Source: Botryllus schlosseri (taxonomy: Eukaryota). Taken from it: a DNA stretch of 64,000 nt. Below, piece after piece: positions 1,200 through 20,900 of this stretch; position 1 is the first letter of the stretch, and each line of letters starts with the position of its first letter. The stretch spans positions 5,580,001 through 5,644,000 of the forward strand of contig CM119386.1 of NCBI GenBank assembly GCA_051294905.1. Reading direction: 5' to 3'. Both the position numbers and the translations under genes were made by a program. Below the pieces are notes generated by a model. That model worked only from the letters and a program-made list of their open reading frames with translations. It did not search any database and was not told the origin of the DNA.

Positions 1200-2250
1200 G
1201 GAAGATGGTCTTCTTGCTTTGAACGGGCTCTGCGCCACGAGACTTTCCATCCAATAATAAGATGCGGCCAATCTGTCCTATGCTGATGTTGTTCAAAATG
1301 TAACAACTGAACTATCCAGAATCACAGACACAAAGATTGAAAACGGCTGTAAGGGTGAGAGATCAAGACGTAAGAGTTATCGCCTGAATCCGCAGCCACC
1401 AAATACAGAGCTCACCGCGACAGAAAACGACACCTCAATTTCCGTATCCAACTCTATGGCGGGACCCCAGCCCGCCGGCAGTCTTTTCGAAATTGTCACA
1501 TTTCTGGATTAAAACCTGGAAACTGGACACTAGTCGGTAGCACGATTGATGATTCCGGTCCGAATATCCATCACTACTAACAATAAATCGCCGCACTATC
1601 AGGAAAGAAAATACAGTTCGGAACGTTCAGCTTTCACTACCGAAAGAAACTGACCACTCTGTTCTTATATCAAACTAGAGATATTTGTTAGAGCGTATCT
1701 CCATTCTCCACTCTCGAGCTATATTCCGTATCTATTATGCTGGAGTGCACGCACCTAATGTAAAACAACCCCATTAGAACGTCACAGCGCAAGTTCATTT
1801 ACTCGATCAACATAAGCGGCGGATTGGTCCATCTGCGCACCATCCGCTTTCTGTACACTCTGCCGTACAAAGTCGCTCGGCATTGAAGCCCCGAACATCT
1901 CCATCGCGATATCGAAACTGATTTTTGCTTCAATAATTGCCGGTAACGACGTTACCATTTCGAATATATCGATTTCGCGCACAGAGACGGGTAAGCATAT
2001 GCGGATACTAACAGCACAATACGTTACAAACGAGAAAACGAAACTGTCAATTCAGGCACAAAGCGACTGCTAAATAATGGCACAATCCCTTCCACAGCTG
2101 CTGGGCTCGGAACCGACTGACACGGAATGATGACAATCCCCGCCTGGCAGCGACACGACTCGATGATTTACAGCCCGTAGAATAGATAACACATAGTCTT
2201 TAAGAGCAAGTACTGGAACTCCGACATCGAAAAGTAAATCCACGACTACA
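1200..2250 (+). mobile_element. Possible highly decayed non-LTR retrotransposon (ORF1 / APE endonuclease) fragment in ERCC8 intron 7
   Basis: Interrupted frames give LSYADVV, CHISGLKP and IAIS...NDVTISNISISRT, loosely like CR1/L2 ORF1 and endonuclease; many stops. Confidence 0.3.
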
Positions 2251-2323
2251 TACGTAGCACGCACATACAATTGTGCTAATGTAAGGCACCCCTGCCAATA
2301 CGAATATCCAGTACAGTTCTTAC

Positions 2324-5300
2324 CTCCCAGAAACCAGCTGATAATCGCAACGGGGCGACCAACGAACACAGAGTACGCCATTCCTGTGACCTGAAAATGC
2401 ATTCCAACGTCAATATAGCACAACAGTTAACATCAAATGCGGTATATACATCAGAACAGCAGGCAGAGCGTAGCCAGGCCGCGAAAGGCGCATAAACCTT
2501 CAATTTTCGACATGCAGACTGTGACATCAATTCACCAGCGATGAAAAATTTTCGCTTTCCCAAAAAGTTCTTTTAATGACCCTACGAAATTATTGTCCTC
2601 ACCACGCCTTCAACCAGACTTGGACAACTAGATAATTCTAGTTGTCTAATTTCACTAAATTAGAGAGAAATCCCAGTAATCTAATTCTAATCTAATTTGG
2701 AAAACCTGAAAATTTTCTAGTTGTCCAAGTACATGCTTGGACAACTAGATAATTCCAGTTGTCTAATTTCACTAAATTAGATCGAAATGCCAGTAATCTA
2801 ATTCTAGTATAATTTGGAAAAGCTGAAAATTTTCTAGTTGTCCAAGTCTGCCTTCAACAGAAAACGATTTTGTAACGGTGACGATCTTAGAAAACTTGAA
2901 ACAATTAAGAATAAAATTCAACTCATCAAGTCAGCACAGGAAACTTCGCTCCATATACGCACCTGCATCTACGCTTTCCAAACCAGATCAAGGAAGAACT
3001 ATTTTCAAGCAGTATATTGGCAACCAAGTATTCGTGGCGCAGTTCTATACGAGCCATTTCATAACTACTGTCCCTACATTCTCAACTCTGTGTCTTTGCG
3101 GTCAATCAGGCACCCAGGAACAAAAGGGCATCAAAGTGAAGTCCGTCGGATTCTCTTATAAAAGCTGTAAGCTGTAAGTAGTACATCCAAACGAGACTGT
3201 AGCTAGCAAAGCCTCAACGAGACGCATTCTTTAATTTACGATGGCTTGCCATGTTTCCAGAGCGACAATAAACACCATCAAAGCTCTGACATCTACAGCG
3301 TTGAGAATAGCCTCGTAAAATTGTAGTTTACGAGCAGCATAACCGCATTCGTCCACTGTGATTACTTTCAAATATCGCGGTGGTCACGATTATTAGAGGG
3401 CCGTGGTGTTGGTGTCTGCCTAAGGCGTTGCGAGGGTGGTATGGTGTGGACATGAGATAAAAAGTTGCGAGATAACGGGAGATGGATAAGAGCGGAACGG
3501 CAAGTTCATACCTACTGTTAATCGAATATCACAGTCCCTAAGCAATGTGCGGGATTCAGATTTTTGAACGTGGAAATATTTTTATAAGCTTGCGCAAGAC
3601 ACACCTCCTACCGCAATTCATCAATCACTTTTCACTATTAATAGAGAACTCTTCAAAGTTACATACTATCGCCATGTCACCTATCTGTGGATATATTTGC
3701 CACCATGTTTGCGCGTGCATAATTTTCGTACGCGCGATCCCATAACATTCATAAGAACATATATAATCATGATGATCGGTAAGCTCACGTGTGTAAGTGT
3801 GTAAGTACTAAGTAGCCTAATATATAATATGTGCCTACCATTTACATACGCAAAACGATACGGAAATGAAAGCAGACGTTGTTTCACGATACACGGTGTG
3901 ATTTAGCTAATGACAACACTTGAAAGAATTACTCGAGACGCAGAAAACCAGCTCGCTACACCCAAAGCGTACGTGAATTATCACGACTCTCTCTCTCTCT
4001 CTCGAATTTAGCGACAATTACGTAATTTGCATCGTAACTAGGCAACACCACCTCCAGCATGTCGCCGATCTGCTTGTAGTAGCGAAATTAAAAGTGATAT
4101 GATTTAGTATAACCTTTACAACTTCATAGTACGGAACAGGTTTCGTTTTTACAAATTTCAGGTAAGCAAGAGGGTTGCAAATAGATTATCGATGAACACG
4201 ACATGTAAACGGCGAAATTACATTACTATATACCGTACCACCCGTTAATTCAGTCTACAATTTAATAAAAATTAATTGCATTACACACCCCGTAAATATC
4301 GGTATCAGACTGAAATTTCAAATATTTCTATCGAAGAGAATGTATTGAAGTCAAGCAATTGCACTACGCAAGGTGCAACAACACTGAAATAATCATATCA
4401 CTGATTGGAAAGTGCTTTAAAAAAGAACTTGAACAATCTAAAGCATTTTAGATCAGTGAAATGCCGAACGAATCCATATTACAATTCTGTCAATTAACAA
4501 TAGTAGTACGTATGCATATGCAGGTCAACCGTCCTTGTATGTATTGTATATAAATATAAATCTCATTAACATATACAACTATGAGAGATACTATGAGTGG
4601 TTTGGATAAGGAGGTGAATGTACAATGTCATCATGAGCAGTTGCCAACTATAGTTTCCACAATGCATGATACGTCCAGGCTTCAGCCGGGCCGGAAAAAT
4701 CGAAGCTTGGTACAAACACGTAGCCCTAAAATCCAGGGTTGTAATGACTCGACTCGAGTCACGATTTTCTGATGACTCGAGTCATTTTCTCAAAATACAG
4801 AAATGACTCGACTCGAGTCAATCAGTGTATTGACTCGACTTGGACTCGAGTCATTGCGCATGACTCGAACCAAGTCATTGACTCGAGATTCAGACGGCCA
4901 AGGCCGACATTTCATTGTAATTCCGAAGCCAACAACTATTGGCATTTCGTCTGTTGATACTACGGGTGCTGGAAAATGCGACCAGAAATTGCTAAAAGTG
5001 AGGAAAATTGGTATACTATAAATGCGAACTATTCGATATCACCAAACACAGTTATAAAAAGTGGGTTTACCAAGACTTTAACTGAAAACTGAGCTGTCAA
5101 CACAATGACTTGGACTCGGACTTGACTCGGTGGTGAATTGCAAATGACTCGACTTGACCCGAGTCAAAACTATAAAAGTGAGATTGACTTGTGACTCGGA
5201 GCCTTGTGACTTGGTTACAACCCTGCGTAAAATCAAACCCTACCTCTCATGATGTGACTGTTTGCCCCAGTTCTCATATCAGCCAAATACACCTTGTTGT

Positions 5301-11933: not shown

Positions 11934-14900
11934 ATGAGACAGATGGTGAGATGAGGATATTGATTCTTTGCGGCATTGCGTGAATTTATTTTCTGTTTTG
12001 TGTTATTCAGCTGGATTTGGCCGGAAAAGTTGGCATCATAACAGGTGGGTGAAATTTATGTTTTCGATTGTATTCATTTTTAAAAATTATTGGTGATCAG
12101 TTTCAACGTACTTCGACTTTCTTGGAATACCAACTGCCGGTCAAAGTAGCCATTGCAATACTAAAGTGGAAGCCATGCTGACAATTTTTACTTTGATACT
12201 AATAGTAGAAATATTTGGGCTGGAAGGCTGCTTCAAGCAGAAGTAAAGATTGGAAGCCATGGGAATTATTGGAATAGGTCGCTTGAAGAAACCAGCTGCG
12301 GACAAACCGTCGTAGACCTTGTTAGTCAATCGCTGGTGACTGATTTCAAAAAGAACATGAAACTAACATAGGATATATTGTATTATCGTTACTTGCCAGG
12401 TTGAAACAGTTTCAGCCGTAAAATCGATACAAGTTTGTTTGAACACTACTTTCTAGTGGACAAAATCAGAAATGTGAAAAGTAAATAGTTTAGCTTTGAA
12501 AAACTTGTACAAGTAGAAGTAGTCTAGTAACATAATAGCTCAAGTAGACCCAATGCATCCGAGTAGATTCTAGATGTAGAAGTATTTTAATAATGACCAC
12601 GTCTGGCAATAGCTTACTCGAGTTCAGTTCCGTTTATTAAAAATTTTCATCAGTTCAAAACACCACAAGACCGCAAAGTAGGCTATTTCCCTCTTGCTTT
12701 GCCATGTTCTGGTTTTGTTTCATTGCTTATGGACAAATAAAGGTCTGCCAAACCACTTCTTGAAGCTTCTCAAGTAGGAGTAGTTGTACCATTCCAACTT
12801 CTTGTTTGCTGCTTGATGTGTCGCTGGCCTCCTTTCGAAGTCATCGCTTGAAGATGAATATATATTGACATTATTACTTACAGTTCAGTATGCTACCATC
12901 AGTGAATAGTGACTAGTCTGACAACCATTGCCACACAGCTGAATACAATCCCTTATTTCACAGTAGGCCTACGGTATAACCGTTTAGCAAGGTTGTAATG
13001 ACACGAATAATGACTCGACTCGCGAGTTTTTGGTGACTAACTCGAGTCATTTTTTCAAATGTGTAAAATGACTCGAGTCAATTTGTGTATCGACTCGACC
13101 TGTACTCGAGTCATTGTGACTTGAGACTAGGACAGCCAAGACAGACCTAGATCATTGTAACTTCGAAGAATAGTAAAGTCACCACGTATTGGTATTCCGT
13201 CTATCAGTCCTTATACTTGCAAATTGTGGCAAAAACTGTTAGGACTGAGGTAAATTACGATATTATATATGCGAGCCATTCCATACCATTCGAGCACAGT
13301 TTAAAAAAGTGGATTCTACCGGATTGAACTCGAAACTGACCAGTGAACACAATGACTTGGTCTTGAACACACACTCAAGTCAAAACACTATGACTTGGAC
13401 TCGACTCTCTACTCACTGACTTGGACTCAGACTTGACTCGGTGGTGAATTGAAAATGACTCGACTTGACTATAAAAGTGAGATTGACTTGTGACTTGGTT
13501 ACAACCCTGCTGTTCAGTAACAAATGCTTCGCAAGTTCTGTTCACCCGTCATAATACTCGAATCCATTAGTTAGGTGTTCTGTGTAATAGGCTATCACTC
13601 TTTGACTACCCCTGAGGTGGCGTACATCGCCATTCTTCATTGATATATTCTTTACTTCTTGTGCTACTGTTTCGAATCTTTATTTTAGGTGCTAGCTCAG
13701 GAATCGGCCGGGCTGCAAGCGTGCTCTTTTCAAAGCTGGGATGCGATTTATCTCTTATTGGGAGAAATGAGAAAAATCTGAGAGCGACTCGGGAAGAATG
13801 CGAGAAAAACGGCGTAAAAGTCAGTCTCTATATCAAGAATTACTACTAAAACCATTTTAATGTTAGTGTCACTTTGTCGGTAATATAACATGTCGTTTTC
13901 GTGGAGCATTTTCATTACGGTACGCTCATCTATGGGCATTCCCCGAGTAGTTGCGTGTTTACCACAATGTTTAAATAATTAACATAGCTACGTTGAAGGA
14001 TTTTCCATTTCATTGGTGTGCGAGACGCTATTTCTCAGCTAATCCACTCCGTTCTTCTTACCAAAGCACATTTAGCGCTAAATATCTTCTTGCACTGTGC
14101 ATTGAATTGTATTTTATGGTATTCAATTTTGCACAGCAATACAAGAGAGACAATCCATTTTAATTGATGAGCTGATAGGACTCTGTTTGAGAAGAATGAT
14201 GGCTGAGGGGTTTGCCAAGATATATAAAAGAGAGTTATTTATGAAAATGTATATAAAAATGAGGCAAGCCCAGTAACTTACAGCAACAAGAATATTTGTA
14301 GTATTCACAAACTCCATGCTACTTCAAAATTTCTGACACTTACTACCAGAGGTGGTCAAAGTAGTCAAGAAAGCTACTCAAGTAGTAGAAGTAGAAGTAC
14401 TTCTTCCATAAGCAACCTGAAACTACTTGAAGTAGAAGTAGAATTGACTGACTTTAAATCTACTCAAGTATGTAAGTAGTTGTGAAAACGATCGTAATTC
14501 GTTCGCATTGATTGCCAAAAGCTGCAAATTGAGCTATGCAAAAGGCAGAGAGCTTTATTCATATTAAATAGTATATTCATATTGAAATGAACCCGAATAT
14601 TTTCGGCTGACACTCGTCAGGGGTAATCGTCAGCAACTAGTAGAGAATTGGAAAGAACATTGTATATCAACAATCGTATCACAAAATATGACGTCACCAG
14701 CATGAAATTTCGAATGAGAGAGCGTTCAATGTACTATTTTTAGGTGATACACGAACTCCTTTTGTTGACAGAGTTTTGGTTGGTGTATTTTGATAAAAGT
14801 TGATTCCAAGGCACACAAATGGAATTGTGAACGGCCTCGACCTACGATTCGGAATCGGTCGTCTCGATAATTATTCGCACAAATCGGATTATCCAACAGA

Positions 14901-17900
14901 TGTTTGCCGATGGCAGAATTAATGGCTTTTGATCGATCAGCATCAATCTTGAGTGGATGAGTTAAGGGTGAGCTTTTCACATCGCGTGACGCACGTGTTC
15001 TGATAAATCTGGGGACATGTTGGTTTATGCGGTCCTGCAGACGTCTTGACGTTCTTCCCACGTAGCCACAATCACAGTGGCACCTATATTCGTACACTAC
15101 ATTACTTTGTTGAAGTGCAGGAAGCACGTCTTTGCGTGTTGAAGGGAGCAGTTGTGTTGTTGTAAAAATCACATTGGTTTTGACTGTATCGTAACATTTA
15201 CCGACAGCAGAAATCAATTGTTTTTCAAAGCGGGTGGAAATGGGGCCAATCCAAGGTAGATGGATATAAACATCTTTTATTGTTCGTGCGGTGGGCTCTG
15301 TTCGTTTTTCTGCGTTGAATTGCGTTAATTTCCTCTCCATGCCGCGGCTGATGACGTGTTCAGGGTAACCGTTATCAAGTAAGATTTTTCGGTTACCCTG
15401 AACACGTCATCAGCCGCGGCATGGAGAGGAAATTAACGCAATTCAACGCAGAAAAACGAACAGAGCCCACCGCACGAACAATAAAAGATGTTTATATCCA
15501 TCTACCTTGGATTGGCCCCATTTCCACCCGCTTTGAAAAACAATTGATTTCTGCTGTCGGTAAATGTTACGATACAGTCAAAACCAATGTGATTTTTACA
15601 ACAACACAACTGCTCCCTTCAACACGCAAAGACGTGCTTCCTGCACTTCAACAAAGTAATGTAGTGTACGAATATAGGTGCCACTGTGATTGTGGCTACG
15701 TGGGAAGAACGTCAAGACGTCTGCAGGACCGCATAAACCAACATGTCCCCAGATTTATCAGAACACGTGCGTCACGCGATGTGAAAAGCTCACCCTTAAC
15801 TCATCCACTCAAGATTGATGCTGATCGATCAAAAGCCATTAATTCTGCCATCGGCAAACATCTGTTGGATAATCCGATTTGTGCGAATAATTATCGAGAC
15901 GACCGATTCCGAATCGTAGGTCGAGGCCGTTCACAATTCCATTTGTGTGCCTTGGAATCAACTTTTATCAAAATACACCAACCAAAACTCTGTCAACAAA
16001 AGGAGTTCGTGTATCACCTAAAAATAGTACATTGAACGCTCTCTCATTCGAAATTTCATGCTGGTGACGTCATATTTTGTGATACGATTGTTGATATACA
16101 ATGTTCTTTCCAATTCTCTACTAGTTGCTGACGATTACCCCTGACGAGTGTCAGCCGAAAATATTCGGGTTCATTTCAATATGAATATACTATTTAATTG
16201 TATATTGAAGTTCTGTACCTCCAAGAAGCTCTTTATTCATATTGATGCATACCAGGACGTGTCCAATTTTCGACAGCATAAACTTTCGTCCGCATGATGG
16301 AATGAAAATGATAGTATTGATATGGAAATGCGATACTAATCCTATGTTTTAGAAAATATCATGATATGGCACCTTCCCCATATTATAAGGCCTGTAGTTT
16401 AGTAAAAGTGTGGAGAAGTTGTATCGGATACGGTGTACACATTTTGCGCGATTGGTAAACGTCAATAAAAAAATGTGGTGTATCGTAAAACTGCCATATT
16501 GTGTAGCTTTATTTCCGGAAATTAAAGGCTTTACTACACTTTCTTTTATACTTAAATATGTCTGTTCTCAAGACAAACGAACTGATACTATGTATAACTC
16601 AAAGTGTAATACTAGGAATTGAAAGTGAAATATATATACTACCTCAAACAGCGGAAAATGTAATTAATGTCTTTAGCCCAGAGAGTTTCAAAGGTTGTAT
16701 ACTGAAACTGGTCTAAAGCTAAAAAAAGTCAGAGCCCACTGTTCCAGATAAGGACACGCCATGGACTGCTAGACTACGATATGATATGATAAGTAAATTT
16801 TAGATTGCGAAACATCAGTTTCAAACGTTATGATGGGCCATATATCTGGGATGAAATATTTCATATGGGTGACAAAGCGGTGTGAACGGAACCACGCAGA
16901 TTGGTCACTCTATATCCGCTGTGCGCAAAGTGCGACGAAAATTATGGGCTTTACTCAACTTTTCTGAACATTAAAGGTTGATACCCCGTGAAAACAGCCC
17001 CAAAATTCCTCAGGCTACCTCCCGATTCGAGGATTAAACTACTTCTACTTGACAAACTGAAAATGGCGAAAAGTAAGTAAGTAGTTCACAAAATATTATG
17101 AAGTAGAAGTAGCAACAACTAGTTCTACTCGAGTAAGTACCAGAAGTAGAGGAAAACTACTTGAGTACTTCATAAAAGTAGAAGTACTTCGTTACTGACC
17201 ACCTCTGCTTACTACCCACCATTTCATACATCGACATCAAGTAGTACAGGCATATTGTCTTAAACTTGTAATTGAGTAAAGTTTACGGCATCTCCGCTAT
17301 TTCAACTTGAATACCACCGACGACTACCTTCTGACCAAGTGACCACTTTTGGGTATCAACATGGTCCGAACACTGATGATCTGTCACAATTTGTCAAGTA
17401 TATTTTCCGTGTTACTTTTAAGGTAATCACTATACCAGCGGATGTAACTTCTCAGCAGGATGTTAAAAGAGTGGCGGAAGAATCTCAAAGCTATTTCAAA
17501 AAACTAGATGTGTTGGTCAACAATGCTGGAATTATTAAGAGTGGCACAATCGAAAATACGACGACTGAAGACTTTGAATCATTGATGGCTATAAATTTGA
17601 TGTATGTAAGATTGTTTGGTTGTAAATCGGCGTATTATTATAGTCTGCAGTAATGTTATTTATCTGATGTTTGTCTGCTTTGAAGGTCAGTGTTTCACTT
17701 GACGCAGTCTTGCTTGCCTCTGTTGATTGAGTCAAAGGGGTCTGTAGTCAATGTCTCAAGTGTCAATGGGATTCGATCGGTAAGTTGCGAAGTTCAGTAA
17801 TTGGGTTGAGCATTTTCAGTTATTCTTGTCCAGTTTCCAGGTGCACTGGCCTACAATGTGTCTAAAGCAGCCCTGGATCAATTAACAAGATGTAGTGCCC

Positions 17901-20900
17901 TAGGTAATTATTGTGCTGTAGCCTACACTCCCTTTGAGTTACTAGTGGATATACTTTCGTAGCTGCCCACAGGGTTTCTTACAGACATGGGGTAATCGCG
18001 ATTAGTAATCGTAATCGATTACGACGATTACAGCATTTTCAAGTAATCGTAATCGCAATCGATTACATTCGAAAAAATCCCGAAGTAATCGTAATCGACT
18101 ACTTCCCATATTTAATCGATTTTTTTGTGAAAGAACGATTACTTTTTATTGGTACAAGGACTGTGACATATACTGAACACTCGTGAACAAGGAATACGCA
18201 TTGTACCAGTTATTGAGAGCACAAGCGTCGGATTTTCTAATGCCACTGCTCATTATTACGTCAGAGGTTGCCTATTAACTCTGCTCGTCTTTGCGTGAGA
18301 AGTGTCCACACATAGTAAATAGATATTCGGTGTACATTAGTGTGATATATATCTGGTATATATCTGGTTATCAATACATTTCAGACACCACTACCTCGCA
18401 ACAGGATAATTAATCACCTCTCTGCCTAAGCAACTTTTGTATTGAATTTTGGTTCTGCTTAGTTAAACTATAGAATGTTCTAGGTCTAATTCTATAGTTA
18501 AATGCAGTTTCAGTTTTGCTGCTTGGCGAGAAGTGGGCCTATATGGCACGAACCTACACCAGACAAAGGCTTGAAATTTTGTACTCGTCAAATAAAACAT
18601 TACAGTTTCCACAACGGCGCATTAAAATCAACAGCTGCTGATATATATCATAACTGGGCCGTTGGTTTGCCGTTTACGTAATGGCAGCCTGCATTACATT
18701 ATCTGCATCAAGTTGAAGGCAGAATTTTATGTTCACTTTCTCTTATTCTCATATTATTCTACTCAAAACGGGCGCCAATCACTATTTCACAATTCTTTAC
18801 TGAACATTTGGACCTGTCGCCATAGCCATCGGCTTATATATACTAGGCTTACCATATTTTGGAAATCTAAAAAGAGGACACTTTTTCAGAAATTTGAGAC
18901 TTGCAAAACCGGAGAAGAATTCTCAAAAACCGGTGAATTTTTCCCACTTTGTGATCGGTTGACTAAAAAAAAAAGTCATCTTTTCCGCCCGGAGCTAAAA
19001 TAACCGTTTTTCACTCCGAAATACCCGCCGGTGCGTCAGTTCTGTGCTAATTTACGGCATATCACTCGTAATTTGTTCTAAATCTTACCTAAATTTTCAA
19101 AAAAGAGGACAAAATCTCAAAAAAGAGGACAAAAGGACGTCCTCCGAGGACACTTTCAAAAAAGTCAAAAAAGAGGACAAATCCTCTTAAAAGAGGACGT
19201 ATGGTAACCCTAATATATACCATGTTAGCGTGGGTTGTAACTAGAATCAGGATCAAAATCGCAAAAGTTTCCCCCACCCAAACATTGGTCTTGTGCCCCC
19301 ATAGAGTAGTCAATTTTGAAGTTGAAGATTTAATTTATTCAATAATATTGGTAATTGCATTATATTGCATTTTTATTCCTATCTCAGCGCCCGATGGCCA
19401 GATTAACCTGAAGAGCAGGGGGCGCGTAATTCATAATTATAACATCTGGTATCTTGCAATAATTACTTTATTGTATGCTGTTAATTCGTGACCTCCGGTC
19501 TGTTATAGAGCCAAAAGATATTGATTGAAGTGGCCCAAATATAGCAGACTAAAAGAAAAACTTGCATGAGACACACTCACGAATTGTCATATCTAATGCT
19601 TTGTGGATGCCCGGGTGGCCTTTACATCGTGGGCTCAGATTGAAAGGAATGGACTGTTAGTCACGCCCACCCAGCGCGGCTATTGACGATGGACACATAC
19701 CCTAAGTTTCCGCCAATGTCTTTCTTTAGTAGCACACTTCGTGGATTCTCATGTTGGCCGAAACTGCATATGTCTTTTGATGTGTCGAAGAGCGGTATTG
19801 AATGATGGCACCTAAATGCCTATTACTATGAATGATACATGCTTTATTTCTTGGGGGGAGACGTATGCATTTCGAAATCAATCTATCTAGAGACATTTAA
19901 ATCGCAAAGCTCAAAGAGAATTTCCAAGTTAATGAAATCTCTCAAAAATACTCTGTAATTTATGGTGGTTTACGAAATACTTTTGAGTAGCCAATCCTCC
20001 AACCACGCTCCCCACCCTATTGGGGTGTTTGGGGTGCGGCAGTTATGGACCTGGCAAGAATGCAAAACGTTGTGAGCGATAAACCGTCCTCTATGAAAAG
20101 GGCAATGGGTACATTATGACGTAACAAGGAAATGTCCCATCTTTTGTAAAGACACTTGTTATATCATTAGGCCTATTCAACGCAATCCATGTATTGTCTT
20201 CCAATATAACTACTACGATGCAAAATAAATGTAATCGTGAGTAATCGTGATTACTTTCGCAATGTAATCGTAATCGTAATCGACTACTTCCTGATTTTGC
20301 TGTAATCGTAATCGTAATCGCGTGATTCTGAAGTAATCGTAATCACAATCGATTACATTCATGAAGTAATCACCCCATGTCTGGTTTCTTACCTAGTCAT
20401 GATACCAGAGTACAAGGTAGCAACTTTGAAACGTAAGAAAAATGCTTGAAGAAAAGGTACAAACGATAAATCTGATAATAATGACTCTACAAAGAAGTGA
20501 AAGTGGCTACAGGTGTTGCTTCGTAAATCAAGAGCGCAATTTAATGTTGCTGCTTGGCCACATTTTAATATGGATGGACACCCCTCTAAAATACTCATGA
20601 GTCATAGAAATAGGCATTTCTGTGCCGGTCATTACCGCGCCACGACATGCCATTGCCCAGACATGTAGCGTTTCTTCCGCCATGCGACTCCACAGAGTGT
20701 AATGCCAAAATCATATGCGGCGAGCTTAATAAAAGCACAGCTTGTTTTTGGTTTCCGTTGTGTAATTCCTCCCTATTGATGATTTATAGAACTTTCGACG
20801 AAGGGCGTTCGTGTCAACTGTGTCAAGTGAGTATGTCGCCTTATCGTGCTGCCCGTTCATACCAGTCTCTTTTGTAGTCCAGGAGTTACGGTCACTGAAT

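What the first reader, a model, noticed from the sequence alone, without database searches (positions are those of the whole stretch)
14553..16243. Penelope-like element fixed as an 809-bp-arm fold-back palindrome whose loop is element sequence
Seen: the arms are reverse complements with identical ORF translations. The 18-nt loop (15372-15389) is not filler: read on the minus strand it continues the ORF as K-I-L-L-D-N into GYP. The minus copy is therefore 18 nt longer at its 5' end, while the plus copy is ~32 nt longer at its 3' end. A 13-bp direct repeat flanks the whole insert. Established: Penelope-like elements often form inverted, 5'-truncated structures. Inference: a truncated cDNA folded back, primed on itself and was integrated in one recent event, leaving an unusually clean record of the mechanism.
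Basis: partly seen in the sequence, partly recalled or inferred. Interest (0 to 1): 0.72.

Follow-up and report, generated by a model that had tools for sequence, protein, structure and literature searches.

The report
Head-to-head Penelope retrotransposon insertion pair
This is a real, very young insertion of a Penelope-like jumping gene that went in as two mirror-image truncated copies in one event, which is the usual insertion style of these elements and recurs at many other places in this genome.

Summary
Two 809-nt arms (14563-15371, 15390-16198) are 100% complementary around an 18-nt loop, and a 13-bp direct repeat flanks the insert. The loop is element sequence: 33 of 33 arms at 24 other loci carry its reverse complement just upstream of the arm start. 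The 13-mer is a true target duplication, because 24 of 26 uninterrupted paralogues of the host repeat carry it once.

The element belongs to a very young 2,692-bp Penelope-like family (RT plus C-terminal GIY-YIG). Head-to-head pairs with a roughly 35-nt "tail" on exactly one arm are its norm, with 19 distinct pairs among about 32 PLE loci fetched. That architecture is already published.

The simple fold-back reading fails. Each arm holds element sequence the other lacks: 32-35 nt of tail on the plus arm and 18-21 nt on the minus arm. The tail-less arm also ends at the family's canonical second terminus.

The best reading is one event in which both target strands primed reverse transcription at two adjacent start sites on one template, and the cDNAs joined at a 3-nt CCG/CGG overlap. 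Truncation points coincide far more than chance across the family (6 of 19 within 25 nt, 0.9 expected). Long-read support and fixation were not tested. The scan flagged a similar palindrome elsewhere in this genome.

The parts
14553..14565 (.). Left copy of the 13-bp target-site duplication (CTTTATTCATATT). Its last 3 nt also match the end of the minus arm.
   Evidence: D6; 24 of 26 uninterrupted paralogues of the host repeat carry this 13-mer once between the same flanks.
14563..15392 (-). Tail-less, 5'-truncated element copy (unit positions 1863-2692). It ends at the family's canonical tail-less terminus ...CTATTTAAT.
   Evidence: 830-nt match, 99.5% to the natural reference unit; tail-less arms at other loci end at the same base.
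15372..15389 (-). The 'loop': 18 nt of element sequence belonging to the minus copy only.
   Evidence: its reverse complement precedes the arm start in 33 of 33 arms at other loci.
15390..15392 (.). Head-to-head junction overlap (CGG on plus, CCG on minus), assignable to either arm.
   Evidence: overlapping matches; the junction 31-mer is unique in the assembly.
15390..16198 (+). Tailed, 5'-truncated element copy (unit positions 1884-2692).
16199..16233 (+). 'Tail': unit positions 1-35, the first bases after the tail-less terminus, lying inside the start of the element ORF. Its last 3 nt (CTT) overlap the target duplication.
   Evidence: same 35 nt in 26 of 30 main copies; in tandem arrays it runs on into the next unit..
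16231..16243 (.). Right copy of the 13-bp target-site duplication.
   Evidence: one 103-nt contig of run X1 (16212-16314, no differences, depth about 8.5, like the unique flanks) crosses the tail/duplication/flank junction.
14726..15340 (-). 204-aa ORF from an internal Met, covering the C-terminal endonuclease region (minus arm).
   Evidence: GIY-YIG match below Pfam's cut-off (E=0.023). GIY-YIG-type residues are visible by eye.
15421..16035 (+). Identical 204-aa ORF in the plus arm.
16137..16170 (+). Invariant 34-nt hammerhead-like box (ACCC, CUGACGA, GAAA, palindromic AAUAUU, UUC/GGGU). A mirror copy lies at 14591-14624 on the minus strand.
   Evidence: exact match in every element arm of all element loci fetched. 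Rfam does not score it. The reading as a minimal hammerhead is by eye and from earlier scan notes.
14347..14552 (.). Left part of the high-copy host repeat into which the element inserted.
   Evidence: 3,055 first-look candidates, best copies 82-94% identical; very high contig depth.
16244..17207 (.). Right part of the same host repeat. The outer limit is approximate, set by the 12-nt inverted match 14347-14358 / 17196-17207.
   Evidence: (I10).

Best explanation
A single retrotransposition event of a young Penelope-like element produced both arms. The element's endonuclease cut both strands of the target 13 bp apart, inside a copy of a high-copy host repeat in an intron-like gap between two short-chain dehydrogenase coding pieces. 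Each exposed 3' end primed reverse transcription of the element RNA. The top-strand end (...CATATT) started at the proximal site (unit position 2692) and gave the tail-less minus arm. The bottom-strand end started about 35 nt further 3' on the RNA, at the distal site (unit position 35), and gave the plus arm with its tail. Both cDNAs copied the same template over the same 3' region and stopped within 21 nt of each other. They were joined head to head through a 3-nt CCG/CGG overlap, most simply by the later cDNA jumping onto, or annealing with, the 3' end of the earlier one, after which each served as template for the other. Shown: the termini, the tail on one side only, the target duplication, arm identity, the junction overlap, and the excess of coinciding truncation points across the family. 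Inferred: use of one RNA molecule, the order of synthesis, and the way the ends were joined.
For: Architecture and identity. Target duplication validated on 24 of 26 paralogous empty sites. In every pair with both outer ends visible, exactly one arm has a tail and the other ends at unit 2692 (L027 alone ends 13 nt short, at unit 2679). The tail/arm boundary is seamless in all tailed copies, and in tandem arrays the tail simply runs on into the next unit. Arms within pairs differ at 10 of 13,500 sites against 0.52% between loci, and WIN's arms share a rare variant. Truncation points lie within 25 nt in 6 of 19 pairs (0.9 expected, P about 1e-4) and within 60 nt in 9 of 19 (1.9 expected). All breakpoints differ and the WIN junction is unique. 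Pairs with widely separated truncation points also have tail-less arms ending exactly at 2692, which a self-copy would not give. Published in vitro work on an anole element shows cleavage and extension of both strands, two adjacent internal start sites with the tail between them, and a preferred ATT cleavage motif (PMC11167929). Here the top strand is cut after ...ATT. A one-sided tail plus an inverted truncated copy is described as typical of these elements (PMC8557442, PMC3846280).
Against: No read-level proof of the central junction was obtained. One search gave only short repeat-swamped contigs, some of them probably from the assembly's own sample. Whether the two cDNAs used one RNA molecule or two transcripts of one source copy cannot be told. 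Two RNA-templated cDNAs do not by themselves explain why truncation points coincide, so an added assumption is needed, such as a trailing enzyme on the same RNA or a shared RNA 5' end. Near-palindromes show slightly fewer arm-to-arm differences than wide pairs (1 of 7,652 against 6 of 5,563, P=0.047), which leans weakly toward one arm being a DNA copy of the other. The sample is 19 pairs, biased toward copies that best match the 3' 844 nt.
Confidence: 0.55

Rival explanations
1. Amended fold-back. The top-strand-primed, tail-less cDNA snapped back on itself at the CCG/CGG overlap and copied itself to make the plus arm. A very short second cDNA primed from the bottom strand at the distal site supplied only the 35-nt tail, and the self-copy joined onto it.
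For: It explains directly why truncation points coincide. It explains why the loop lies on the tail-less arm in the three filler-free near-palindromes with both ends visible (WIN, L003, L009). It fits the 2-3 nt overlaps and the slightly lower arm-to-arm difference in near-palindromes. Self-priming has been proposed for these elements (PMC3846280).
Against: The self-copy would have to stop exactly at the boundary between cDNA and primer DNA and join the tail without a scar. The template strand runs on into the target duplication, yet no inverted copy of it is seen. Tailed copies without an inverted partner (L011, L018, L024, L029, L030) and wide pairs show that distal-site cDNAs normally run long through the proximal site.
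Confidence: 0.2
2. Pure single-cDNA fold-back. One truncated cDNA folded back, primed on itself and was integrated, with no second priming event.
For: Perfect arm identity, a short loop and a 3-nt inverted overlap at the turn.
Against: Each arm holds element sequence the other lacks: the tail 16199-16233 on the plus arm and 15372-15389 on the minus arm. In neither strand does the antisense arm carry both. The tail-less terminus is the canonical one shared by other loci.
Confidence: 0.04
3. Both strands primed on two unrelated RNA molecules, and the near-equal truncation at this locus is coincidence.
For: Both-strand extension is documented in vitro (PMC11167929). A single locus could coincide by chance, at roughly 1-2%.
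Against: Coincidence is strongly enriched across the family. The arms share a variant carried by only 3 of 29 other arms, and within-pair divergence is seven-fold below between-locus divergence.
Confidence: 0.08
4. Assembly artefact: a collapsed or chimeric palindrome that does not exist in the genome.
For: Perfect palindromes of high-copy repeats are hard to assemble, and the central junction was not confirmed with reads.
Against: Both outer junctions have canonical element termini. The target duplication is validated on paralogues. A single-copy-depth contig crosses the right junction. The same architecture occurs at 18 other places on many contigs, each with its own breakpoints.
Confidence: 0.04
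5. A DNA-level origin: two independent insertions, or an inverted duplication or repair-generated palindrome formed from an ordinary truncated copy after insertion.
For: None specific. Later homogenisation of the arms cannot be excluded.
Against: One duplication flanks the whole unit and no arm has its own. A DNA-level fold-back would copy the tail or flanking DNA and would not end at the canonical tail-less terminus.
Confidence: 0.03

Closest known systems
Canonical endonuclease-containing Penelope-like element insertions (for example Pen2a_Av of Adineta vaga and Penelope of Drosophila virilis), as described in PMC3846280 and PMC8557442
   Same: Single ORF with RT followed by a GIY-YIG region. 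Partial tandems. An adjacent inverted 5'-truncated copy. A 30-40 bp tail on one end only, lying inside the first codons of the ORF. A short target duplication. Small overlaps or palindromes at the inverted junction.
   Different: Here both copies are truncated at nearly the same point, so no RT-coding part remains and the insert is an almost perfect 1.64-kb palindrome. No hammerhead scorable by Rfam is found, only a minimal hammerhead-like box.
PAc (Poseidon of Anolis carolinensis) in vitro reaction, PMC11167929
   Same: Both target strands are cut and extended. Reverse transcription starts at two adjacent internal sites just inside the ORF, with the tail between them. There is an ATT-type cleavage site. 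The order hammerhead, ORF start, start sites along the RNA is the same.
   Different: In PAc the start sites lie 111-118 nt into the ORF and show no homology to the cleaved DNA. Here they lie about 18 and 53 nt in, and both primers share 3 nt with the RNA at this locus. The paper does not address how the two cDNAs are joined or how truncation points relate.
L1 twin priming (Ostertag and Kazazian 2001, as summarised in PMC10760644)
   Same: A second priming event at the target site, with the two cDNAs joined by microhomology within one insertion flanked by one target duplication.
   Different: In L1 the second primer anneals internally, so the two segments are different parts of the RNA (a 5' inversion). 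Here both cDNAs start at the element's 3' region and duplicate the same sequence, giving a palindrome.
Hairpin (snap-back) self-priming by reverse transcriptases, known from classical cDNA synthesis (own knowledge) and proposed for these elements in PMC3846280
   Same: A short loop and a 2-3 nt overlap at the turn. Arms are identical.
   Different: It cannot supply the tail or explain the canonical tail-less terminus.

Membership tests
Endonuclease-containing Penelope-like elements (C-terminal GIY-YIG type) | Reverse transcriptase domain in the single ORF | tested here: met
   A natural full-length ORF of the family (L031:5665-8205, 847 aa) matches RVT_1 at E=7.7e-9, above Pfam's cut-off. The nearest Atlas clusters are animal RVT_1 / HTH_animal / DUF8422 proteins, some with GIY-YIG. 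The window's own arms lack the RT part.
Endonuclease-containing Penelope-like elements (C-terminal GIY-YIG type) | GIY-YIG endonuclease at the C-terminus | tested here: inconclusive
   Pfam GIY-YIG E=0.023, 15.4 bits, below the 22.6 cut-off. No solved-structure relative was found by sequence. GIY-YIG-type residues (VVYEY...GYVGRT...R...H...E) are visible by eye in the translation. One Atlas neighbour cluster carries GIY-YIG in 27% of its members. The fold was not predicted.
Endonuclease-containing Penelope-like elements (C-terminal GIY-YIG type) | Partial or full tandem arrangement (pseudo-LTRs) | tested here: met
   Head-to-tail arrays with a 2,692-bp period are seen at one place on contig C16 (L013, L014, L031), and a two-unit head-to-tail junction in L010 on contig C2.
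Endonuclease-containing Penelope-like elements (C-terminal GIY-YIG type) | 30-40 bp tail, usually on one end only | tested here: met
   A tail of 32-44 nt is present in 26 of 30 main copies. It sits on exactly one arm in every pair with both ends visible, this locus included.
Endonuclease-containing Penelope-like elements (C-terminal GIY-YIG type) | Adjacent inverted 5'-truncated copy, the whole unit flanked by a short target duplication | tested here: met
   19 distinct head-to-head pairs were found. Duplications of about 11-15 bp can be read. The 13-bp duplication here was validated on paralogous empty sites.
Endonuclease-containing Penelope-like elements (C-terminal GIY-YIG type) | Hammerhead ribozyme motif near the unit boundary (typical of canonical clades, not strictly defining) | tested here: inconclusive
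   No Rfam hammerhead hit in the arms, the unit boundary or the whole unit. An invariant 34-nt box with hammerhead core elements is present in every arm. Earlier scan notes read it as a minimal hammerhead with an unusual helix II. Cleavage was not tested.
L1-type twin-priming inversion | The inverted segment is a different, more 5' part of the same RNA (inversion, not duplication) | tested here: not met
   Both arms cover the same unit positions, 1884-2692.

The most novel reading that the evidence does not exclude
The family's head-to-head pairs may be an in vivo record that both target strands prime on one and the same RNA at the two adjacent start sites. On this reading the two cDNAs are physically coupled: a trailing enzyme behind a leading one, or a jump onto the first cDNA's 3' end. 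That would give two classes of product, near-palindromes with the loop on the tail-less arm and wide pairs with a short tail-less arm. It would link the in vitro two-site, two-strand initiation of these elements to the long-unexplained inverted and one-sided-tail architecture, and give a testable model for the joining step.
Probability: 0.4. Interest if true: 0.55.

Novelty: new member of a known kind. Interest (0 to 1): 0.33.

Why it matters
As a single locus it is ordinary: a typical Penelope-like insertion structure in a genome full of them. Its value lies in the family. That family is abundant, nearly undiverged, and rich in clean junctions, intact target duplications and paralogous empty sites. 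Those features make it a good natural data set for the still unresolved integration mechanism of Penelope-like elements, in particular how the two cDNAs made from the two target strands are joined. A perfect 809-bp hairpin transcribed within a host gene could also feed double-stranded RNA into small-RNA silencing of the family. That is an inference and was not tested.

Tried and rejected
1. The Rfam scan of 13000-18000 gave only a MIR6426 'hit' on both strands. This is the palindrome centre scoring as a generic hairpin, so it was rejected.
2. Rfam hammerhead models found nothing in the arms, the unit boundary or the whole unit.
3. Read laying returned only short contigs swamped by repeat copies. 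It could not test the central junction or an empty allele. The many 'skips about 1685' joints carry 7-14 other letters and come from paralogous copies of the host repeat, not from an empty allele of this locus.
5. A sequence search of solved structures with the endonuclease region gave only a spurious ribosomal protein match.
6. Propagation from a palindromic master copy was rejected, because the junction 31-mer is unique in the assembly and all pairs have different breakpoints.
7. Comparing arm-to-arm differences between near-palindromes and wide pairs gave only a borderline result (P=0.047). It does not decide between a self-copy and two RNA copies.
8. The large protein searches and structure prediction were not used, because the family assignment was not in doubt.
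9. No consensus of the element was built. A natural genomic unit (L031:5683-8374) served as the coordinate reference.
Full report
**What is there**

Positions 14563-15371 and 15390-16198 are 809-nt arms that are 100% complementary, separated by 18 nt. The 13-mer CTTTATTCATATT stands at 14553-14565 and again at 16231-16243. Each arm carries the same 204-aa ORF. That ORF has a sub-threshold Pfam GIY-YIG match (E=0.023), and GIY-YIG-type residues are visible by eye. The frame through the loop is open on both strands, so translation alone could not show which reading is element sequence.

**The family**

The window is G000:C16:5580001-5644000 of a 495-Mb assembly. A search with the plus arm found 3,312 first-look candidates, and all 40 scored ones on other stretches were 98-100% identical. 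I used a natural tandem unit (L031:5683-8374, 2,692 bp, period confirmed) as the coordinate reference and built no consensus. Unit position 1 is the first base after the arm end, and position 2692 is the arm end (...TTTAAT).

The unit's ORF starts 18 nt before the arm end and encodes 847 aa. It matches RVT_1 above Pfam's cut-off, and its nearest Atlas clusters are animal RT/HTH_animal/DUF8422 proteins, some carrying GIY-YIG. This locus is the only copy of the family in the window.

**The loop**

In 33 of 33 arms at 24 other loci, the 18 nt upstream of CGGTTACCC are AAAAATCTTACTTGATAA, the reverse complement of the loop.

The element has CCG immediately before those 18 nt. CCG is the reverse complement of the first three bases (CGG) of the plus arm. 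The junction therefore carries a 3-nt overlap, and the minus arm covers unit 1863-2692 against 1884-2692 for the plus arm.

**The tail**

Beyond the arm end the plus copy continues for 35 nt (16199-16233). The same 35 nt follow the arm end in 26 of 30 main copies. In tandem arrays they simply continue into the next unit. This is the 'tail' described for Penelope-like elements (PMC8557442, PMC3846280). The minus arm lacks it and ends at ...TTTAAT, exactly as the inverted arms of at least 11 other loci do.

**The target duplication**

The flanks belong to a high-copy repeat, with 3,055 and 3,685 first-look candidates for the two sides. I compared 26 uninterrupted paralogues against the left and right flanks, each taken with its own 13-mer. 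In 24 of them the two flanks overlap by exactly those 13 nt: CTT[G/T]ATTCATATT followed by GATGCATACC. The 13-mer is therefore pre-existing target sequence that was duplicated on insertion.

Three bases at each end of the duplication also match the element termini (ATT at the proximal end, CTT at the distal end). That amounts to 3 nt of primer-template complementarity on each side.

**Is the structure unusual for the family?**

No. About 32 distinct element loci were fetched, and 19 of them are head-to-head pairs.
- Every pair with both outer ends visible has a tail on exactly one arm, and the other arm ends at unit 2692. One pair (L027) ends 13 nt short of that, at unit 2679.
- The junction shows 1-9 nt of overlap in 14 pairs, is blunt in 1, and has 12-24 nt of filler in 4.
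- Breakpoints all differ (unit 576 to 2573).
- The junction 31-mer of this locus occurs once in the assembly.

These are therefore independent events and not copies of a palindromic master. The scan's first stage also flagged another 1.6-kb Penelope palindrome elsewhere in this genome (s1-249658), which I did not examine.

**One event, one template**

Arms within pairs differ at 10 of 13,500 shared positions (0.07%), against 0.52% between loci. Thirteen of the 19 pairs show no difference at all. The two arms here are identical and share a C at 15909 (unit 2403) that only 3 of 29 other arms carry.

**Why the simple fold-back fails**

A single cDNA that folds back and copies itself yields a strand of the form antisense arm, loop (antisense), sense arm. 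In that strand the sense arm can hold nothing that the antisense arm lacks.
- On the plus strand the antisense arm (left) has the loop but not the tail, yet the sense arm (right) ends with the tail.
- On the minus strand the antisense arm has the tail, but the loop reads in sense orientation.

Neither strand fits. A self-copy would also run on into the covalently attached primer DNA, and no inverted copy of the duplication is present. Finally, the tail-less terminus is a fixed family-wide position. That marks an initiation site and not a termination point.

**What fits**

Published in vitro work on an anole element shows that the protein cuts and extends both target strands. It starts reverse transcription at two adjacent internal sites just inside the ORF. 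The tail is the stretch between those two sites, and ATT is the preferred cleavage motif (PMC11167929).

The top-strand primer here ends in ...ATT. The two arm termini lie about 18 and 53 nt into the ORF, 35 nt apart. The RNA around them is moderately structured (z=-2.4). The best reading is therefore priming from both strands at the two start sites in one event.

**Coupling of the two arms**

Truncation points of paired arms lie within 25 nt in 6 of 19 pairs, where 0.9 are expected from 20,000 random re-pairings (P about 1e-4). They lie within 60 nt in 9 of 19, where 1.9 are expected. Synthesis of the two arms is therefore coupled.

Among the three filler-free near-palindromes with both ends visible (this locus, L003, L009), the loop lies on the tail-less arm each time. 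In pairs with widely separated truncation points, the arm without a visible tail is the shorter one in 9 of 10.

I favour two RNA-templated cDNAs on one template, with the later one joining the 3' end of the earlier one through the short overlap. This keeps the tail/arm boundary seamless by construction and uses the same steps that the wide pairs demand.

An amended fold-back remains possible: snap-back of the tail-less cDNA, plus a 35-nt cDNA from the other strand. It explains the coupling directly. It is weakly favoured by the lower arm-to-arm difference in near-palindromes (1 of 7,652 against 6 of 5,563, P=0.047). It needs a scarless stop at the cDNA/primer boundary, however.

**Not settled**

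- Read support for the central junction is missing. One search returned only short contigs swamped by repeat copies. One contig at single-copy depth crosses the right junction, but it may come from the assembly's own sample.
- Whether the insertion is fixed or polymorphic was not tested.
- The hammerhead status is open. Rfam finds none. An invariant 34-nt box with hammerhead core elements sits in every arm, and earlier scan notes read it as a minimal hammerhead with an unusual second helix.

**Context**

Coding pieces matching adh_short lie on the plus strand at 13640-13849 and 17339-17653. The insert probably sits in an intron, inside a copy of the host repeat. If so, the host pre-mRNA would contain an 809-bp perfect hairpin.

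**Verdict**

It is wrong in its simple self-priming form and overstated about rarity. The structure is a known kind of Penelope-like insertion. The family-level statistics are a modest new lead on how such pairs form.

Noticed in passing
window 14347-14552 and 16244-17207; loci L036-L064: The element sits inside a copy of a repeat of roughly 1.2 kb with thousands of first-look candidates (82-94% identical) and a 12-nt inverted match near its ends (CAGAGGTGGTCA / TGACCACCTCTG). It looks like a non-autonomous DNA-transposon-like family and was not classified.
   Followed up: partly
L003 (G000:C15:21791076-21794919): Another head-to-head pair of the same element family inserted into another copy of the same host repeat. 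Its target duplication (ATAGCTCAATTT[G/A]CA, reverse complement of TGCAAATTGAGCTAT) lies only about 15-30 nt from the equivalent of this locus's site. This hints at a preferred target within that repeat.
   Followed up: no
window 16137-16170 (+) and 14591-14624 (-); L031:5621-5654: An invariant 34-nt box with hammerhead core elements and a duplicated CUGACGA box just upstream. Rfam models do not score it. It lies about 30 nt upstream of the proximal start site and 14 nt upstream of the ORF start codon.
   Followed up: partly
L031 (G000:C16:20947000-20956999), positions 1366-4156: Next to a tandem array of at least three units, the inverted arm is itself split by about 1.4 kb of unrelated sequence with a 10-bp duplication of unit positions 2225-2234. 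Unusually, this arm carries a tail at its outer end.
   Followed up: no
L006 (G000:C1:7710152-7713995): A head-to-head pair inserted into an older copy of the same element family (nested insertion; flanks match unit positions 2568-2609 and 2593-2692).
   Followed up: no
one search runs X5-X15: Runs labelled marine, seawater and hot-spring metagenomes and three other organisms hold about 0.28-0.32 of the sampled words of window:13900-16900, roughly the share made up by the element arms. Either DNA of this organism is present in those samples or near-identical element copies occur in other species.
   Followed up: no
window 15314-15447: Rfam reports MIR6426 on both strands at E=8e-11, below its gathering score. 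This is the centre of the palindrome scoring as a generic long hairpin and not a microRNA gene.
   Followed up: yes
family-wide: Head-to-head pairs fall into two groups: near-palindromes (truncation points 8-60 nt apart) and wide pairs (123-1,456 nt apart). In 9 of 10 wide pairs the arm without a visible tail is the shorter one.
   Followed up: partly
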